From Lytechinus pictus (taxonomy: Eukaryota): a stretch of 64,000 nucleotides of DNA. Position numbers and translations under genes: made by a program. Within the stretch, counting starts at the first letter, position 1. Every line of letters starts with the position of its first letter. The stretch lies in NCBI RefSeq assembly GCF_037042905.1, contig NC_087246.1, positions 34,224,001 through 34,288,000 on the forward strand. Direction: 5' to 3'. Below, piece by piece: positions 23,902 to 47,857 of this stretch. Below the pieces are notes generated by a model that saw nothing but the letters and a program-made list of their open reading frames with translations, made no database searches and had not been told where the DNA came from.

Positions 23902-24091
23902 TCTCTCTCAATTTCTAGGGGAGGGCATTATGCAAGTCGTCGAACATTTTGTATCGCAGACTACTTGGAATAAGGCCATACAGGCTTCTTCTACGGCACA
24001 ACTGATTTCAAAACAATACCAAAAAAAGTTCTTCCTGTATATTCGATAGATAAAAGTCACTGCAGTAGATTCAATGAAAAAAATAAAGTGT

Positions 24092-24163
24092 TAGCAGAGC
24101 GAGGTTTCGATCCTCGGACCTCTGGGTTATGGGCCCAGCACGCTTCCGCTGCGCCACTCTGCT
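24092..24163 (-). tRNA. tRNA-iMet (CAT), consensus
   Basis: AGCAGAGTGGCGCAGCGGAAGCGTGCTGGGCCCATAACCCAGAGGTCCGAGGATCGAAACCTCGCTCTGCTA; A1:U72, A54/A60, C33 and three G:C anticodon-stem pairs are eukaryotic initiator hallmarks. Confidence 0.95.
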
Positions 24164-24425
24164 TCACGGTAAGTCCCCTAGTATCTTCACATAATGAACC
24201 CAGTTTAATGATCATGAGAAAAATCTCTAAGAACGAATGAAATGACAGCAAGAAACAATTAAAAACATATATAGCAGAGCGAACCTTTAAAAGACTTCTC
24301 ATTAATGGGCTAGAGCAATTTTGCTTTTATAATGAAGAATATTTTGTATTAGAAAATCAAGCAAAAGAAATAGACTTCCTTTCATTTTAATCAAAAAATT
24401 AAACGAAAAAAAATCATAGGCCTTC

Positions 24426-24497
24426 TAGCAGAGCGAGGTTTCGATCCTCGGACCTCTGGGTTATGGGCCCAGCACGCTTCCGCTGCGCCACTCTGCT
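24426..24497 (-). tRNA. tRNA-iMet (CAT), consensus
   Basis: Identical to array consensus. Confidence 0.95.
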
Positions 24498-24715
24498 TCC
24501 CGATATATACTACTCTCTTTTCATAATGATTCAATTTTTATCAATTATGAAAACGATGTAAAGGAGTGAATGAAAGGGCAACAAGGAACAATTGAAAAAA
24601 ATACAGATTTAGCAGAGCGACTTTGCAAAATACTCCCCATACATGGACCAAAGCATCGCTAATTTGCTTCTATATATATGCATGATGAACAGTGCTTAGA
24701 AAATCACGCAAAAAT

Positions 24716-26899
24716 TCAGATATTCAGATATTCAGATATTCAAAATTTATTGTCATGCTCAAAAATAAAAATTACATTGGCACAAAAATCATATTCCGGC
24801 TGTTGGTATACAAAGAACAATATATAACATATAATAAATAAATTACAAAAATAATGGCATTAAATAATATACAAAGCAAAAATTACACAAAGACCTAATA
24901 CTAACCCAGAACAATATGATACCCTGCAAGGGCAGCTGCACTGAAAACTTTACCTGGTGCCGAGGGGGGAAATGCCTCGAGCACGGTGCCAGTCCAACAC
25001 ATCCATGGGCCCCGGTTCGACATTGAAACAATCACAACACATCACACTACAAAAACACAAAAAACCCATCCACACCACACCATGCCGATAAACACACCCC
25101 CAAAACTCCACACCAAAAACACACCACACACCACAGAAACATCTCACACCACAACACAACACACCATACCAACCCACACTACACACTACAAGTCATCGAT
25201 AACAATGATGTCGAAACGGCACCCATCCAGTGCTGGACACCACCACCACGCCCGGCGGTCCCCCCTCAGGACCAAGCAGCATTGCCTCAGCACAGCCGCC
25301 CCCGCAACGTATAAAAGTAATATAGCATGACAATTAAGTACAATACAAGAAATCAATTGGATTAAAATACATGTTGGAGTAAGTACTTGGCGGTATTTCG
25401 GTTTCAGTTTGAAGGGTATTGCCCACTAACAAAACAATATTGCACATGATATAAATTTAAGGGGGGGGGGGGGGGCTCATCGTTTAAACTCTGCATTGTA
25501 CAGAACCATTGCATTTGTGAGGAAAGAACATCTAAACCTACTAGTCCTTATTCTTGGTAACCGGATCCGCCCAGACCTATTAAAAACTACAAAGTCATGG
25601 AGGGGATGGGTATCGTCTCTGATGATACTATGTAGCTTATCCAAGACTGCTTTGTAAGCTATGTCTTCCAACTGGGGTATTGGCAAACCTATCACTTTAC
25701 TGGCATTTTTTATTGCCTTGCTCAGCCTATCCTTATTCTGGGAAGTTAGACCAAAAAACCAGATAGCACAGGAAAAAGAAATGATAGGTTTGATCAAACT
25801 TTCAAAACAGAACAGAAGAGTCTCTCTTTTGACGCTGAAAGATTTCAACTTCCTCAGAAAGTATACTCTCTGGTTCGCCTTTGAGACAATTTTTTGAGTG
25901 TTAACATTCCAGTTCAGATCATTATCTATGTGGGTGCCAAGATATTTGTATTCTGACACTATCTCAATTTCATCTTGATCAATGACAATTGGGCAAGGGT
26001 CATAATTCTTTTTCCGAAAATCCACTATCATTTCTTTTGTTTTCTTAGTGTTTAACAACAATGACATCTGTTTGCAACTTGCAACAAAATCAGCTACCTT
26101 ATTCCTGTACTCAACTTCATTATTGTCTTTAACTAGTCCAATTATACATGTGTCATCTGCATATTTAACTACCTTACAGTGTTCTGTATTAGACTGATTA
26201 TCTGAATCGCTTGTGAAAAGAGTATACAACATTGGCGACAATACACAACCTTGCGGAGTGCCTGTGTTGAGAATTTTTTCTTCAGAGAGCACATCCCCCA
26301 TTCTTACTCTTTGGGGCCTATTTGTCATGAAATCTCCTATCCATAGTAAAAGCCGTGGGTTGACATTCATGTCATACAGCTTTCTAATCAACATGTGAGG
26401 TACAATAGTGTTGAAAGCCGACGTGAAATCTGCAAACAAAATTCTAACATATGTAAGTGGTTTGTCAAGATGACCTAATACAGTGTGAGTCAAAAAAGCA
26501 CATGCATCTTCAACACCCCTGTTATCTTGATATGCAAACTGAAGTGGGTCCACAATGTTCTTTGTTTCTTCCTTTAAAATATCTCTAACAACCTTTTCAA
26601 AACATTTCATAATCACAGGTGTTAAAGCTATAGGTCTGAAATCATTTAACTGCCTTGGTTTGGCAACTTTGGGTACAGGGGATATAATGGCAGATTTCCA
26701 CAACAATGGAATTGTGTGCGAGTCTAATGACCATTGGAATAATCGACTAAAAATGCCACACAACTGTTGACTACATGATTTTAACATTCTTCCGCCTAAC
26801 CCATCTGGGCCTGTTGCTTTACTACTCTTTATTGACTTAAGCACCTTCCTAACAACCTCTTCAGTAATAACATTCCTGTCTTGCTCTGTTACATGACCT
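24716..26899 (-). mobile_element. 5'-truncated non-LTR retrotransposon, Rex1/Babar-like
   Basis: RT ORF; 3' end AATAAA followed by (TGAATATC)n tail; AAAAT TSD at 24711-24715 and 26900-26904; empty site visible in paralogous spacers (e.g. ~29502-29520). Confidence 0.9.
24919..25312 (-). other. Long imperfect RNA hairpin in the LINE 3' UTR (two ~105-nt arms, ~185-nt GU-rich loop)
   Basis: 24919-25023 is inverted-homologous to 25208-25312; most differences give G-U pairs only on the sense (minus) strand. Confidence 0.8.
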
Positions 26900-26919
26900 A
26901 AAATAGACTTTACTTCCAT
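25477..26919 (-). CDS. LINE reverse transcriptase (endonuclease missing; first ~7 codons come from the host spacer)
   Basis: 480-aa open frame with KATGPDG, LNDFRPIALT, DPLQFAY, ADFTSAFNTI, GTPQGCVLSP, KYADD and YKYLG motifs. Confidence 0.85.
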   Translation of the reverse strand: MEVKSILGHVTEQDRNVITEEVVRKVLKSIKSSKATGPDGLGGRMLKSCSQQLCGIFSRLFQWSLDSHTIPLLWKSAIISPVPKVAKPRQLNDFRPIALTPVIMKCFEKVVRDILKEETKNIVDPLQFAYQDNRGVEDACAFLTHTVLGHLDKPLTYVRILFADFTSAFNTIVPHMLIRKLYDMNVNPRLLLWIGDFMTNRPQRVRMGDVLSEEKILNTGTPQGCVLSPMLYTLFTSDSDNQSNTEHCKVVKYADDTCIIGLVKDNNEVEYRNKVADFVASCKQMSLLLNTKKTKEMIVDFRKKNYDPCPIVIDQDEIEIVSEYKYLGTHIDNDLNWNVNTQKIVSKANQRVYFLRKLKSFSVKRETLLFCFESLIKPIISFSCAIWFFGLTSQNKDRLSKAIKNASKVIGLPIPQLEDIAYKAVLDKLHSIIRDDTHPLHDFVVFNRSGRIRLPRIRTSRFRCSFLTNAMVLYNAEFKR

Positions 26920-27215: not shown

Positions 27216-27449
27216 TTACCAATTTTTTTGTCCTCCCAATTTGATTTAAACCATATTATCTATATGAGGGGAATAACATTAAAATAACAAGTAATTCTAT
27301 GAACAAAGTGAGCAGAGCGAAGTTTCAAAGGACTTTTCATGTATTTGCCGAGTTCATGTCCTATGCGTATAACTTTGCTTCTTTAACAACCGGAATTTTG
27401 ATGAAAAATGTTATACGTCGATGATAAAAACAAAAGAAAGAAAATATAT

Positions 27450-27521
27450 TAGCAGAGCGAGGTTTCGATCCTCGGACCTCTGGGTTATGGGCCCAGCACG
27501 CTTCCGCTGCGCCACTCTGCT
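27450..27521 (-). tRNA. tRNA-iMet (CAT), consensus
   Basis: Identical to consensus. Confidence 0.95.
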
Positions 27522-27765
27522 TCACGATAAATGCCAGGTTCTTTCATCATGATTCCAATTATGAGGATAATCTGTACAAATGAATGACAAACAAGAGACA
27601 ACTTCAAAACAAATTTAGCAGAGCGATACTTCAAGACTTTTTATAGCCAAGCGCAGCAATATTTTTCTTCTATGTATATAATGAACACTGCTAACAAAAT
27701 CATGCAAATAAAAAGACTTTTCTTCCTTTTTTAATCGTAAATATGAACGAAACCAAAAATGGTAT

Positions 27766-27837
27766 TAGCAGAGCGAGGTTTCGATCCTCGGACCTCTGGG
27801 TTATGGGCCCAGCACGCTTCCGCTGCGCCACTCTGCT
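27766..27837 (-). tRNA. tRNA-iMet (CAT), consensus
   Basis: Identical to consensus. Confidence 0.95.
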
Positions 27838-28104
27838 TCATGGTAAGTACCCGAGTATCTTTTCATGAACCAATTTTAATGATCATGAGAATAATCTCTA
27901 AGAACGAATAAAATTACCCTGAGAAACAAATAAAAACAAATTTAGCAGAGCGAATATTTAAAAGACTTCTCATTCATGGGCCAATGCAGAGCCATTTTGG
28001 TTTTATAATGAAGATTATTTTGTATTCGAAAATTATGCAAAACAAATACATTTTCTATCATTTAAATCAAAAATATTAAACGAAAAAAAAAACAACAATC
28101 AGAA

Positions 28105-28176
28105 TAGCAGAGCGAGGTTTCGATCCTCGGACCTCTGGGTTATGGGCCCAGCACGCTTCCGCTGCGCCACTCTGCT
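28105..28176 (-). tRNA. tRNA-iMet (CAT), consensus
   Basis: Identical to consensus. Confidence 0.95.
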
Positions 28177-28653
28177 TCGCGGTAACTGGAGTATCTTTTC
28201 ATAATGATTAAATTTTAGCAATCATGAAAACAACGTAAAGGAGCTAATGAAAGGGCAACAAGGAACAATTAATAAACAAATTTAGCAGAGCGACTTTGCA
28301 AAATACTCCTCGTACATGGACCAATGCATCGCTAGTTTGCTTCTATATACGCATATTGATCAGTGCTTAGAAAATCATGCAAAGATAGACTTTACTTCCA
28401 TTTTAATTGAAAATTATTATGAAGACACATTGCTATTACAGTATTAATAATGAGAAGGAACTCTAAGAATGAATGGAATGACAAGAAACAATTAAAAATA
28501 ATAATAATGCAAAACTATTTTTTATTCATGGGCCCAAGCACCCTAAAGCCATTTTGCCTTTATATTGAACAATAACTTGTACTAGAAAATCATGCACAAG
28601 AAATATACATCCTTCCAGTTTAGTTGAAAATATTATAACGATAAAAAATGTAT

Positions 28654-44815: not shown

Positions 44816-45092
44816 ATCCACATTTGTACCACTTCACAATGGGCCCACTTTTCAGGATATGCAATAATGCGAGAGACATCATGCAACAACTGAAACCACC
44901 CATGTGTGAAATTGTTACAGGGTGTTTGAGGAGATTCAAGACAGCCATATTCGGGTATTTCTAGAAATACAACACCCGGTTTGAAAATTGTATACACACA
45001 TTAAAAAGTGGTCCTTAACTTTTTTTGAGTAGTGTATGTTATTCCTTTTCAATTGAATATTACAAAAGATCGGTTAAGAGGAAATAGTATGT

Positions 45093-45164
45093 TAGCAGAG
45101 CGAGGTTTCGATCCTCGGACCTCTGGGTTATGGGCCCAGCACGCTTCCGCTGCGCCACTCTGCT
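45093..45164 (-). tRNA. tRNA-iMet (CAT), consensus
   Basis: Identical to consensus. Confidence 0.95.
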
Positions 45165-45408
45165 TCACGATAAATGCAAGTTTCTTTTCATCATGATTGC
45201 AATTATGAGAATAATATGTACAAATGAATGACAACAAGTAACAACTTCAAAACAAATTTAGCAGACGGATACTTCAAGACTTTCTATAGCCCAGCGCAGC
45301 AATATTTTGCTTCTATGTATATAATGAACAGTGCTTACAAAATCATGCAAATGAATAGACTTTTCTTCCTTTTTTAATCGAAAATATGAACGAAACCAAA
45401 AATGGTAT

Positions 45409-45480
45409 TAGCAGAGCGAGGTTTCGATCCTCGGACCTCTGGGTTATGGGCCCAGCACGCTTCCGCTGCGCCACTCTGCT
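45409..45480 (-). tRNA. tRNA-iMet (CAT), consensus
   Basis: Identical to consensus. Confidence 0.95.
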
Positions 45481-45724
45481 TCACGATAAATGCAAGTTTC
45501 TTTTCATCATGATTGCAATTATGAGAATAATATGTACAAATGAATGACAACAAGTAACAACTTCAAAACAAATTTAGCAGACTGATACTTCAAGACTTTC
45601 TATAGCCCAGCGCAGCAATATTTTGCTTCTATGTATATAATGAACAGTGCTTACAAAATCATGCAAATGAATAGACTTTTCTTCCCTTTTTAATCGAAAA
45701 TATGAACGAAACAAAAAATGGTAT

Positions 45725-45796
45725 TAGCAGAGCGAGGTTTCGATCCTCGGACCTCTGGGTTATGGGCCCAGCACGCTTCCGCTGCGCCACTCTGCT
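45725..45796 (-). tRNA. tRNA-iMet (CAT), consensus
   Basis: Identical to consensus. Confidence 0.95.
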
Positions 45797-45982
45797 TTAC
45801 GATAATGTCGAAGATACCTCCACATAATTCAATGTTAATGATAATTTTATAAGAAGGAATGAAATGAAAATAAATAGTTGCGAAAACATACATTTAGCAG
45901 AATAGATTTTTCACTCATGCCTCAATATAACTCAGTCATTTTTGCGTAACTTTTTTTTCTCCAATAAATCAAAAGAAATATG

Positions 45983-46138
45983 GGGCCTGTTTCATACAGG
46001 ACTTACAACTGTTGTAACTTTGTTATTATGACAACTACCATAGAAACCTTGATTCTGATTGGCTGCCGAGCCCTGTTACCATGGTAGTTGTCATAATGGC
46101 AAAGTTAAAAAGTTGTAAGTCCTTTATGAAACGGGTCC
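45983..46138. mobile_element. Palindromic MITE (Harbinger-like) in an array spacer
   Basis: GGGCCTGTTTCATA / TATGAAACGGGTCC TIR, ~60-bp inverted arms, ATG TSD. Confidence 0.8.
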
Positions 46139-46199
46139 ATGATGCTACTTCTTTTCAATTAAATATATTAAACGACCAGTAAAGAGGAAAAAAATATAT

Positions 46200-46271
46200 T
46201 AGCAGAGCGAGGTTTCGATTCTCGGACCTCTTGGTCGTGGGCCCAGCACGCTTCCGCCGCGCCACTCTGCT
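46200..46271 (-). pseudogene. tRNA-iMet-derived copy with anticodon CAC (probable pseudogene)
   Basis: U36C, A37G, C41A, A14G, G53A. Confidence 0.7.
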
Positions 46272-46516
46272 TTTTGGGAATTACTGGGATATCTCCACAT
46301 AATTCAATGTAAATGATAATTATATAAGAATATGAGGAATAACGTGAAAATAAATAGTTGCGAAATCATACATATAGCAGGTCAGATTTCTTATTCATGG
46401 GTCAATATAACTTAGTCATTTTTGCTTAACTTTGTTTCTAATAAGTCAAGATATATGACTTTATTCCTTTTCAATCAAATATATTAAACCACCAGTAAAA
46501 AGGAAAAAATATATAC

Positions 46517-46588
46517 TAGCAGAGCGAGGTTTCGATCCTCGGACCTCTGGGTTATGGGCCCAGCACGCTTCCGCTGCGCCACTCTGCT
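46517..46588 (-). tRNA. tRNA-iMet (CAT), consensus
   Basis: Identical to consensus. Confidence 0.95.
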
Positions 46589-46770
46589 TCATTGGAATTT
46601 CAATGAATCCTCCACATAATTCAATGTAAATGATAAAAGATTTCGCATTCAACGGTCAATATAACTTAGTCATTTTGCATAACTTCATTTTATTAAGTCA
46701 AAGGAAATATGATGTTATTTCTTTTTAATCAAAAATATTAAACCACCAGTAAAGAGGAAAAAATATATAT

Positions 46771-46842
46771 TAGCAGAGGGAGGTTTCGATCCTCGGACCT
46801 CTGGGTTATGGGCCCAGCACGCTTCCGCTGCGCCACTCTGCT
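46771..46842 (-). tRNA. tRNA-iMet (CAT), G65C variant
   Basis: One T-stem mismatch. Confidence 0.85.
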
Positions 46843-47080
46843 TCATGAGAAATACAAAGATATCTCCACATAATTCAATGTAAATGATAATTATATAAGA
46901 AGGAATGAAATGAAAATAAAGTTGCGAAAACATACATTTAGCAGAATAGATTTCGCATTCAACGGTCAATATAACTAAGTCATTTTGCGTAACTTTGTTT
47001 TTATTAAGTCAAAAGAAATATGGCGTTATATATTTTCAATTTAATATATTAAACGATCAGTAAAGATGAAAAAAATATGT

Positions 47081-47152
47081 TAGCAGAGCGAGGTTTCGAT
47101 CCTCGGACCTCTGGGTTATGGGCCCAGCACGCTTCCACTGCGCCACTCTGCT
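47081..47152 (-). tRNA. tRNA-iMet (CAT), C16U variant
   Basis: D-loop change. Confidence 0.92.
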
Positions 47153-47340
47153 TCACGATAAATACCATCTCTTTTCATAATGATTGCAATTATGAGAATA
47201 ATCTGTTAAAACAATGGACAACAAGAAACAATTCAAAAAAATTAGCAGAGTGATTCTTTAAGACTTTTTATTCATTATCTAGCGCAGAAATACTTCCTTT
47301 TTTAACTGAACATAATTTTATTAACGAAAAAAGGGTGTAT

Positions 47341-47412
47341 TAGCAGAGCGAGGTTTCGATCCTCGGCCCTCTGGGTTATGGGCCCAGCACGCTTCCGCTG
47401 CGCCACTCTGCT
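47341..47412 (-). tRNA. tRNA-iMet (CAT), U47G variant
   Basis: Variable-loop change. Confidence 0.9.
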
Positions 47413-47601
47413 TCACGATAAATACCAGTCTCTTTTCATAATGATTGCAATTATGAGAATAATCTGTAAAAACAATGGACAACAAGAAACAATTAAAAAA
47501 AATTAGCAGAGTGATACTTTAAGACTTTTTATTCATTATCTAGCGCAGAAATACTTCCTTTTTTAACTGAACATAAGTTTATTAACGAAAAAAAAGTGTA
47601 T

Positions 47602-47673
47602 TAGCAGAGCGAGGTTTCGATCCTCGGACCTCTGGGTTATGGGCCCAGCACGCTTCCGCTGCACCACTCTGCT
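47602..47673 (-). tRNA. tRNA-iMet (CAT), C11U variant
   Basis: U11-G24 wobble retained. Confidence 0.9.
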
Positions 47674-47857
47674 TCACACGGCTATTGATCAGTAATAACA
47701 TGGTTTTAAATAAAATCATCTTCGGGTATAACATTATGGCCATCTTTTTTCTAATACTACAATTGTATTCAAATCCATTCTGCCACCCACCTTGTTATGA
47801 ATAAAATATGGGTAGGAAAGCTCGATATTATCCTCCAGTTCTAAAAATTATTTTGGA

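What the first reader, a model, noticed from the sequence alone, without database searches (positions are those of the whole stretch)
24919..25312. Strand-specific ~100-bp G-U-rich RNA duplex in the retrotransposon 3' UTR
Seen: plus-strand ATACCCTGCAAGGGCAGCTGCACTGAAA...CGAGGGGGGA...GTCCAACAC...ATGGGCCCCGGTTCGACAT (24919-25023) aligns with the reverse complement of 25208-25312 (ATACGTTGCGGGGGCGGCTGTGCTGAGG...TGAGGGGGGA...GTCCAGCAC...ATGGGTGCCGTTTCGACAT). About 16 transition differences, as far as I could align by eye, all fall in the direction that gives G-U wobbles in the element's sense RNA and A-C mismatches on the other strand. Neutral decay of a DNA inverted repeat would not be so one-sided. 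The loop is a ~185-nt almost purely G/U tract. Inference: a selected RNA structure, possibly for RT cis-recognition, export or stability, or a duplex that avoids Dicer/ADAR sensing. I know of no such element described for Rex1/Babar 3' UTRs.
Basis: partly seen in the sequence, partly recalled or inferred. Interest (0 to 1): 0.8.

Follow-up and report, generated by a model that had tools for sequence, protein, structure and literature searches.

The report
Wobble-rich RNA hairpin in LINE tail
A jumping gene (LINE retrotransposon) carries in its 3' untranslated region a roughly 100-base-pair hairpin that folds well only as the element's own RNA; every subfamily in this genome has it, so it is probably a long version of the 3' hairpins already known from such elements.

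Summary
Window 24919-25023 and 25208-25312 are an imperfect inverted repeat around a 184-nt loop that is 87% G+U on the minus strand. The minus strand is the sense strand of a 5'-truncated APE+RT LINE.

- **Asymmetry:** a strand-neutral alignment of the two arms gives 15 transitions that form G.U in the sense RNA and 2 that form A.C. The arms alone fold at about -141 kcal/mol (sense) and -94 (antisense).
- **Not a private insertion:** all 16 aligned copies carry the hairpin with the same asymmetry, including one only 70% identical. No copies exist outside the LINE.
- **Selection:** changes shared by subfamilies mostly keep pairing, through C-G/U.G/U-A chains. Single-copy (post-insertion) transitions at Watson-Crick pairs keep or break pairing 15:15.
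- **Editing not supported:** single-copy A>G is no more frequent than T>C, and 8 of 14 switching pairs involve C/U changes.
- **Truncation points:** 5' truncations cluster at the 3' base of the stem, as if the reverse transcriptase stalls there.

My best reading is a cis-acting RNA structure kept by selection on the transcript. Its function is inferred, not shown. Full covariation is not above controls, cross-species data could not be fetched, and RNA-seq was too sparse. The Rex1/Babar label is untested. This is a new variant of a known kind, of moderate interest.

The parts
24714..26901 (-). 5'-truncated copy of an APE+RT LINE (about 2.2 kb)
   Evidence: 99.5% identical over 2182 nt to a longer copy, L061. 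That copy has an uninterrupted 976-aa ORF with Exo_endo_phos (weak hit), RVT_1 and ALKBH8_N-like domains.
25477..26901 (-). C-terminal part of the RT ORF, with TGA stop at 25479-25477
   Evidence: RVT_1 E=2.5e-30. The ORF's ATG at 26919 lies in flanking DNA beyond the limit of homology.
25461..25475 (-). C15 tract directly after the stop codon
   Evidence: Seen. Present in all copies that reach it, with a length of 6-16 C.
25324..25337 (-). 5' strand of a predicted long-range closing helix (UUAAUUGUCAUGCU)
   Evidence: Inverted repeat I4, 13 of 14 complementary. Paired in both the MFE and the centroid of the whole UTR. Invariant in the copies that reach it.
25208..25312 (-). 5' arm of the giant hairpin in the sense RNA
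25024..25207 (-). 184-nt loop, 87% G+U; the fastest-evolving part of the UTR
   Evidence: Composition. 11% fixed young-versus-old differences, against 3-6% elsewhere in the UTR.
24919..25023 (-). 3' arm of the giant hairpin
   Evidence: 5' truncation points of other copies cluster in its lower 30 nt.
24761..24918 (-). Conserved AU-rich distal 3' UTR
   Evidence: 2.9% fixed divergence between subfamilies. Largely conserved even in L054.
24746..24760 (-). GAGCAUGACAAUAAA motif: 3' strand of the closing helix, containing AAUAAA
   Evidence: CAUGACAAUAAA also precedes the tail of a related family, L068.
24714..24740 (-). Octamer microsatellite tail (AAUAUCUG)3 plus AAU
   Evidence: (D4). The repeat number varies between copies.

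Best explanation
The hairpin is a structural module of this LINE family's 3' UTR that forms in the sense transcript. It has about 79 base pairs in a 105-nt stem, and about a quarter of them are G.U. Selection on the RNA of the active lineage has kept it: transitions that turn Watson-Crick pairs into G.U, or G.U back into Watson-Crick, are tolerated, while changes that give A.C are removed. This makes the duplex stable only on the sense strand. The antisense RNA and the first-strand cDNA fold much less well, and folded as single-stranded DNA both strands are far weaker. Inferred, not shown: the hairpin and a predicted 11-14-bp closing helix fold the roughly 760-nt UTR so that the stop codon lies near the conserved 3' end (CAUGACAAUAAA plus octamer repeats). 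That would help the element's own protein assemble on, or recognise, its template in cis, as proposed for the smaller 3' hairpins of CR1/L2-type LINEs. A side effect is that reverse transcription often aborts on entering the stem.
For: - Every UTR-bearing copy has the hairpin: 16 aligned copies, 70-100% identical.
- The G.U-type to A.C-type ratio is 15-22 to 0-5 in every copy, and sense is 24-52 kcal/mol more stable than antisense, typically about 45.
- 96.7% of pair cells are canonical in the sense strand, 74.6% in the antisense, and 42-49% with slid partners.
- Of 17 paired positions with variants shared by subfamilies, 15 show only pair-preserving variants. These include the chains C-G/U.G/U-A at 16/503, 103/432 and 121/413, and A-U/U.U/U-A at 57/464.
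- Single-copy transitions at Watson-Crick pairs keep or break pairing 15:15. Shared versus single-copy keep/break is 15/3 against 24/33, Fisher p=0.003.
- Arms and flanks differ 3-6% between subfamilies; the loop differs 11%.
- Eight of 24 5' truncation points fall within q533-569, at the 3' base of the stem (p=9e-5 against uniform, p=0.003 against the local neighbourhood). Five were checked at the junction.
- A related family with 54% amino-acid identity has a 25-bp hairpin about 75 nt after its stop codon, and the same pre-tail motif.
- The young copies are 99-100% identical, and sense-oriented RNA-seq reads match the ORF at 99% or more.
Against: - The number of pairs with double-sided changes (4) is no higher than in slid-partner controls (2-4).
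- The pair list came from RNAalifold on the same alignment, which favours pair-keeping shared changes. Restricted to transitions at Watson-Crick pairs, the shared/private contrast is not significant (4/1 against 15/15, p=0.35).
- One shared G>A in the young subfamily breaks a likely C-G pair.
- The stems are no more conserved than the flanking UTR.
- All copies descend from one ancestor, so the asymmetry is in effect a single observation.
- No data from other species and no structure probing were available. RNA-seq coverage over the hairpin was close to zero.
- The hairpin sits about 200 nt upstream of where RT-recognition hairpins are usually placed.
Confidence: 0.5

Rival explanations
1. The pattern is an RNA-editing footprint. 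An originally perfect inverted duplication formed long dsRNA in the transcript. ADAR-type A-to-I editing turned A-U into G.U and A.C into G-C, and retrotransposition fixed the edits. This would give one-sided wobbles without any selection for structure.
For: The mechanism predicts many G.U pairs and almost no A.C. Young versus old subfamilies show 11 A>G among 53 A, against 6 G>A among 139 G. The G of G.U pairs has a 5' G less often than the G of G-C pairs (5/19 against 20/43), and 10 of 19 have a 3' G.
Against: With L054 as outgroup, the young branch has A>G 6, T>C 6, G>A 4 and C>T 2, which is not hyperediting. Single-copy changes are strand-symmetric: A>G 5.2 and T>C 6.2 per 1000 base-copies. 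Eight of 14 switching pairs involve C/U changes, including U>C, which ADAR cannot make. The neighbour preference is not significant. Seventeen A-U pairs remain. No RNA-DNA differences beyond variants of other copies were seen.
Confidence: 0.15
2. The hairpin is a neutral relic. An inverted duplication (for example an RT snap-back) or a captured palindromic element sits in a tolerant part of the UTR. The asymmetry arose once by chance in the common ancestor, and all copies inherited it.
For: All copies share ancestry, so the bias is one event. Double-sided covariation is not above controls. The stems evolve at the same rate as the flanks. A close protein relative (68% identity) shows no comparable hairpin in the 291 nt after its stop codon.
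Against: The chance of 15:2 is about 0.001. Pairing has been kept through about 30% sequence divergence. Neutral single-copy transitions break pairs half the time. No independent copies of the arms exist outside the LINE.
Confidence: 0.15
3. The hairpin interacts with host RNA pathways. It could be a source of, or a decoy for, small RNAs (Dicer hairpin-RNA). Or it could be a dsRNA- and UG-binding-protein platform (Staufen-type, TDP-43/CELF-type) that controls the stability or location of the transcript, with wobbles tuning how well it is recognised.
For: It is a long, imperfect A-form duplex with a UG-rich loop. RNA-seq coverage drops over the hairpin in the run that covers the ORF, which could mean cleavage.
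Against: No small-RNA data were available. There is no Rfam match. The coverage drop rests on a few dozen reads and could equally reflect library bias against stable or low-complexity RNA.
Confidence: 0.1

Closest known systems
CR1-type LINE 3' structure (hairpin plus 8-bp microsatellite), proposed as the RT recognition site (Suh 2015, as cited in PMC8665684)
   Same: Single APE+RT ORF. The 3' UTR ends in an octamer microsatellite. A stable RNA hairpin in the 3' UTR is conserved within the family.
   Different: The CR1 hairpin is short and lies directly upstream of the microsatellite. Here the stem is about 100 bp with a 184-nt loop and ends about 150 nt before the pre-tail motif. The octamer is AAUAUCUG, not AUUCURUG. 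Only a weak helix (-5 kcal/mol consensus) is predicted next to the tail.
Stringent-type fish L2 LINEs (UnaL2, ZfL2), whose ORF2 protein recognises a 3'-tail stem-loop (PMC4176376)
   Same: A LINE with a conserved 3' UTR and a repeat tail, where an RNA stem-loop is the cis signal for its own RT.
   Different: Those stem-loops are small and lie in the terminal ~60 nt. No binding or retrotransposition assay exists for this element.
Rex1/Babar LINEs of teleosts (PMC6274825)
   Same: APE upstream of RT, frequent 5' truncation, and a conserved 3' UTR followed by oligonucleotide tandem repeats.
   Different: Clade membership was not tested. The best named teleost proteins are only 41-46% identical. 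No long hairpin is described in the Rex1 review that was read.

Membership tests
CR1/Rex1-type LINE with a 3' hairpin and microsatellite | Single ORF with an APE endonuclease and a reverse transcriptase | tested here: met
   L061 has a 976-aa ORF with RVT_1 at E=1e-29. Exo_endo_phos scores E=1.9e-4, 21.7 bits, below the 24.5-bit cut-off, so the APE call is weak.
CR1/Rex1-type LINE with a 3' hairpin and microsatellite | 3' end made of tandem oligonucleotide repeats of variable number | tested here: met
   (AAUAUCUG)n with 1-3 or more units in different copies.
CR1/Rex1-type LINE with a 3' hairpin and microsatellite | Stable hairpin immediately upstream of the microsatellite | tested here: inconclusive
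   Only a weak consensus helix is predicted next to the tail (-5 kcal/mol). The strong hairpin lies about 150-550 nt upstream. A predicted closing helix uses the pre-tail motif.
CR1/Rex1-type LINE with a 3' hairpin and microsatellite | Phylogenetic placement of the RT inside the Rex1/Babar (or CR1) clade | not testable with these tools
   No reference set of classified LINE RTs was available. Database names are generic.
CR1/Rex1-type LINE with a 3' hairpin and microsatellite | The hairpin is bound by, or required for, the element's own RT | not testable with these tools
   This needs a binding assay or a retrotransposition assay.
ADAR hyperediting footprint fixed by retrotransposition | Excess of A>G over T>C on the sense strand among copies | tested here: not met
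   5.2 against 6.2 per 1000 base-copies for single-copy changes. Young branch A>G 6 against T>C 6.
ADAR hyperediting footprint fixed by retrotransposition | 5' neighbour preference (G disfavoured) at the edited sites | tested here: inconclusive
   5/19 against 20/43 with a 5' G; not significant.
MITE or foldback element inserted in the UTR | Independent copies of the inverted-repeat unit outside the host element | tested here: not met
   A genome search with the hairpin returned only copies or fragments of this LINE, plus weak GT-rich matches to the loop alone.
Known structured RNA family or pre-miRNA | Match to a curated covariance model | tested here: not met
   No Rfam hit at E<=1 on either strand.

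The most novel reading that the evidence does not exclude
The LINE has evolved an 'RNA-only' duplex. It is a 100-bp helix so rich in wobbles that it folds well only as sense RNA. That could give a cis signal or scaffold for its own RT, keep the cDNA and the genomic DNA free of a stable palindrome, and blunt recognition by Dicer or ADAR. The price would be frequent RT arrest at the base of the stem, which would also limit the number of full-length copies.
Probability: 0.12. Interest if true: 0.7.

Novelty: new variant of a known kind. Interest (0 to 1): 0.4.

Why it matters
How stringent-type LINEs recognise their own RNA is still understood from only a few small 3' stem-loops. This family is low-copy and apparently still active, and its giant, strand-specific hairpin leaves a readable trace in the genome: the truncation points. 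That makes it a workable case for asking how RNA structure in the template shapes RT processivity, 5' truncation and cis-preference. If the hairpin turns out to be only a tolerated relic, it remains a clean example of G.U/A.C asymmetry revealing the transcribed strand of a repeat.

Tried and rejected
1. **ADAR hyperediting.** It looked attractive from the raw young-versus-old counts. It weakened after polarising with L054, after the single-copy spectrum and after the neighbour test.
2. **Cross-species comparison.**
   - The two best long contigs (P0003, P0004) gave no DNA.
   - The UTR of the 68%-identical relative (L064) shows no significant similarity to this UTR with the hairpin interior removed: score 160.5 against shuffles 154.8 +/- 8.2. 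An apparent shared 'AUAC...GUAU' stem base is therefore only anecdotal.
   - The hairpin of the 56%-identical relative (L070) is not more stable than shuffles, z=-1.2.
   - L071 showed nothing comparable.
3. **RNA-seq.** Only 22-41 reads per run were laid. The differences seen travel in blocks that match older copies, so they are not editing. Coverage over the hairpin is too low to interpret.
4. **Loop as a decayed part of the palindrome.** The purine/pyrimidine self-complementarity is only z=2.4, which is inconclusive.
5. **Double-sided covariation.** The count is not above slid-partner controls.
6. **Whole-UTR z-score.** It is uninformative (+0.5, 20 shuffles), because G/U-rich shuffles fold well.
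8. **Element-wide G/T mutation bias.** Rejected: ORF third positions show almost no skew.

Full report
**What is there.**
- The plus-strand segments 24919-25023 and 25208-25312 form an imperfect inverted repeat around a 184-nt spacer.
- The region lies downstream of a minus-strand ORF (25477-26919) with an RVT_1 domain (E=2.5e-30).
- It lies upstream, in minus-strand terms, of three AAUAUCUG repeats at 24740-24717.
- The relevant RNA is therefore the minus strand. The hairpin occupies nt 169-562 of a roughly 760-nt 3' UTR.
- The window copy is 5'-truncated at about 26901. It is 99.5% identical over 2182 nt to a longer copy (L061), which has an uninterrupted 976-aa ORF with a weak APE endonuclease match plus RT.

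**Is the asymmetry real?**
- A scoring scheme that treats all mismatches alike aligns the two arms with 71 matches, 15 transitions that give G.U in the sense RNA, 2 that give A.C, 13 transversions and 8 gap columns. The binomial p is 0.0012.
- The 431-nt region folds at -158.5 kcal/mol on the minus strand and -96.6 on the plus strand. The arms joined by a tetraloop give -141 and -94.
- With DNA parameters both strands are much weaker: -59 and -45.
- One caveat applies. Z-scores against dinucleotide shuffles are similar for the two strands, and uninformative for the whole UTR, because G/U-rich shuffles also fold well.
- The loop is 87% G+U, not purely G/U.

**Family-wide, not private.**
- The genome (812 Mb) holds at least 43 matches to this UTR. 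A young group is 93-100% identical, and older groups are 78-87% identical.
- A search with an older hairpin added one copy at 70% identity (L054) and two half copies.
- Every copy that spans the region has the hairpin. No copies of the arms exist outside the LINE, which refutes the 'private MITE' alternative.
- In all 16 aligned copies the G.U-type to A.C-type ratio is 15-22 to 0-5, and the sense fold is 24-52 kcal/mol more stable than the antisense, typically about 45.
- RNAalifold predicts a 79-pair main stem. 96.7% of cells are canonical in the sense strand, 74.6% in the antisense, and 42-49% when partners are slid by 1-3 columns.

**Selection or mutation bias?** Three tests were run.
1. 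*Shared versus single-copy changes.* Variants seen in one copy are mostly neutral decay after insertion. At Watson-Crick pairs their transitions keep or break pairing 15:15. Variants shared by subfamilies reflect the active lineage. Of 17 paired positions with shared variants, 15 show only pair-preserving ones. These include the chains C-G/U.G/U-A at three pairs and A-U/U.U/U-A at one. Overall keep/break is 15/3 for shared and 24/33 for single-copy changes (p=0.003). This is weakened in three ways. The pair list was derived from the same alignment. The contrast restricted to transitions at Watson-Crick pairs is not significant (p=0.35). The count of double-sided changes (4) is no higher than in slid controls.
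2. *RNA editing.* ADAR acting on a long duplex would also give G.U without A.C, and raw young-versus-old counts looked A>G-rich. With L054 as outgroup, however, the young branch has A>G 6, T>C 6, G>A 4 and C>T 2. Eight of 14 switching pairs involve C/U changes, including U>C. Single-copy changes are strand-symmetric, with A>G 5.2 and T>C 6.2 per 1000 base-copies. The 5'-neighbour test is not significant. Editing is therefore not needed and not supported, although a small contribution cannot be excluded.
3. *General composition bias.* ORF third positions show almost no G/T skew, so the bias is local to the hairpin.

Between subfamilies the arms differ by 4-6%, the flanks by about 3% and the loop by 11%.

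**A trace of the structure in vivo?**
- The 5' ends of truncated copies cluster at UTR positions 533-569. This is where a reverse transcriptase coming from the 3' end enters the stem.
- Eight of 24 truncation points lie in these 37 nt (p=9e-5 against a uniform spread, p=0.003 against the neighbouring 193 nt).
- Five of the eight were verified at the junction, and one pair of loci was collapsed as a duplicate.
- This fits RT arrest at a folded template, but three of the eight points rest only on where the alignments end.

**Context and architecture.**
- The UTR starts with a C tract (15 C here).
- An 11-14-bp complementarity joins a segment 11 nt before the hairpin to the GAGCAUGACAAUAAA motif just before the tail. 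It is predicted in both the MFE and the centroid of the whole UTR.
- A related family in the same genome (54% amino-acid identity, L068) has a near-perfect 25-bp hairpin about 75 nt after its stop codon. It has the same CAUGACAAUAAA motif before a (GAAUU)n tail, and a comparable predicted closing helix.
- The distal 200 nt are AU-rich, strongly conserved and only weakly structured.

**Comparison with known systems.**
- CR1-type LINEs are described as having a 3' hairpin plus an 8-bp microsatellite, hypothesised to be the RT recognition site (PMC8665684).
- Zebrafish L2 ORF2 proteins recognise their own 3'-tail stem-loops (PMC4176376).
- Rex1 has a conserved 3' UTR followed by oligonucleotide repeats (PMC6274825).
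- This element shares that general plan. Its hairpin differs in being several times longer, carrying a large UG-rich loop, and lying upstream of the terminal region.
- Rfam has no match.
- The Rex1/Babar label could not be tested. The nearest proteins are unnamed (68% and 56% identity), and named teleost RTs are 41-46% identical.

**What failed.**
- Cross-species DNA was mostly unavailable or uninformative.
- RNA-seq gave only 22-41 reads per run. Sense-oriented reads at 99% identity or more cover the ORF in one run, but hardly any reads cover the hairpin. The mismatches seen belong to older copies.
- Further genome fetches were blocked.

**Verdict.** The most likely explanation is a conserved sense-RNA hairpin maintained by selection on the transcript, with a cis role in the element's RNP or template recognition (function inferred; confidence about 0.5). 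It is a new, unusually large variant of the known LINE 3' UTR hairpins and is moderately interesting.

Noticed in passing
window 25324-25337 and 24746-24759: A 14-nt complementarity (13 of 14) joins a segment just upstream of the hairpin to the pre-tail motif GAGCAUGACAAUAAA. It is paired in both the MFE and the centroid of the whole UTR. A related family (L068) shows an analogous predicted helix.
   Followed up: partly
window 25461-25475: A homopolymer C tract (15 C in the sense strand) lies directly after the stop codon. It is present in all copies that reach it, with variable length (6-16 C).
   Followed up: no
L068:1160-1290 (G000:C14, about 14494660-14494790): A related LINE family (54% amino-acid identity) has a 25-bp near-perfect hairpin in its 3' UTR and a (GAATT)n tail preceded by CATGACAATAAA. 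The family has about 40 copies at 78-100% identity.
   Followed up: partly
L020 and L021 (G000:C8, about 5.41 and 5.61 Mb): Two older copies share an identical insertion of roughly 290 nt in the distal UTR. It carries a tRNA-like GGTTCGAACCC box, so it is probably a SINE. The two loci look like a segmental duplication.
   Followed up: no
window 24088-24715 and about 27433-28386; also window about 45088-47677: The DNA on both sides of the LINE belongs to one repeat family. That family is also arrayed in tandem on G000:C10 at about 7.14-7.16 Mb, so the LINE inserted into a repeat array.
   Followed up: no
window 24836-25003 and 25172-25339: In two RNA-seq runs, reads in the orientation opposite to the element carry the variants of an older subfamily. 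An older copy elsewhere is probably transcribed antisense, perhaps inside a host gene.
   Followed up: no
window 24986-25330 (+): The 114-aa GTG ORF on the plus strand runs through the CA-rich antisense of the loop and is almost certainly spurious.
   Followed up: no
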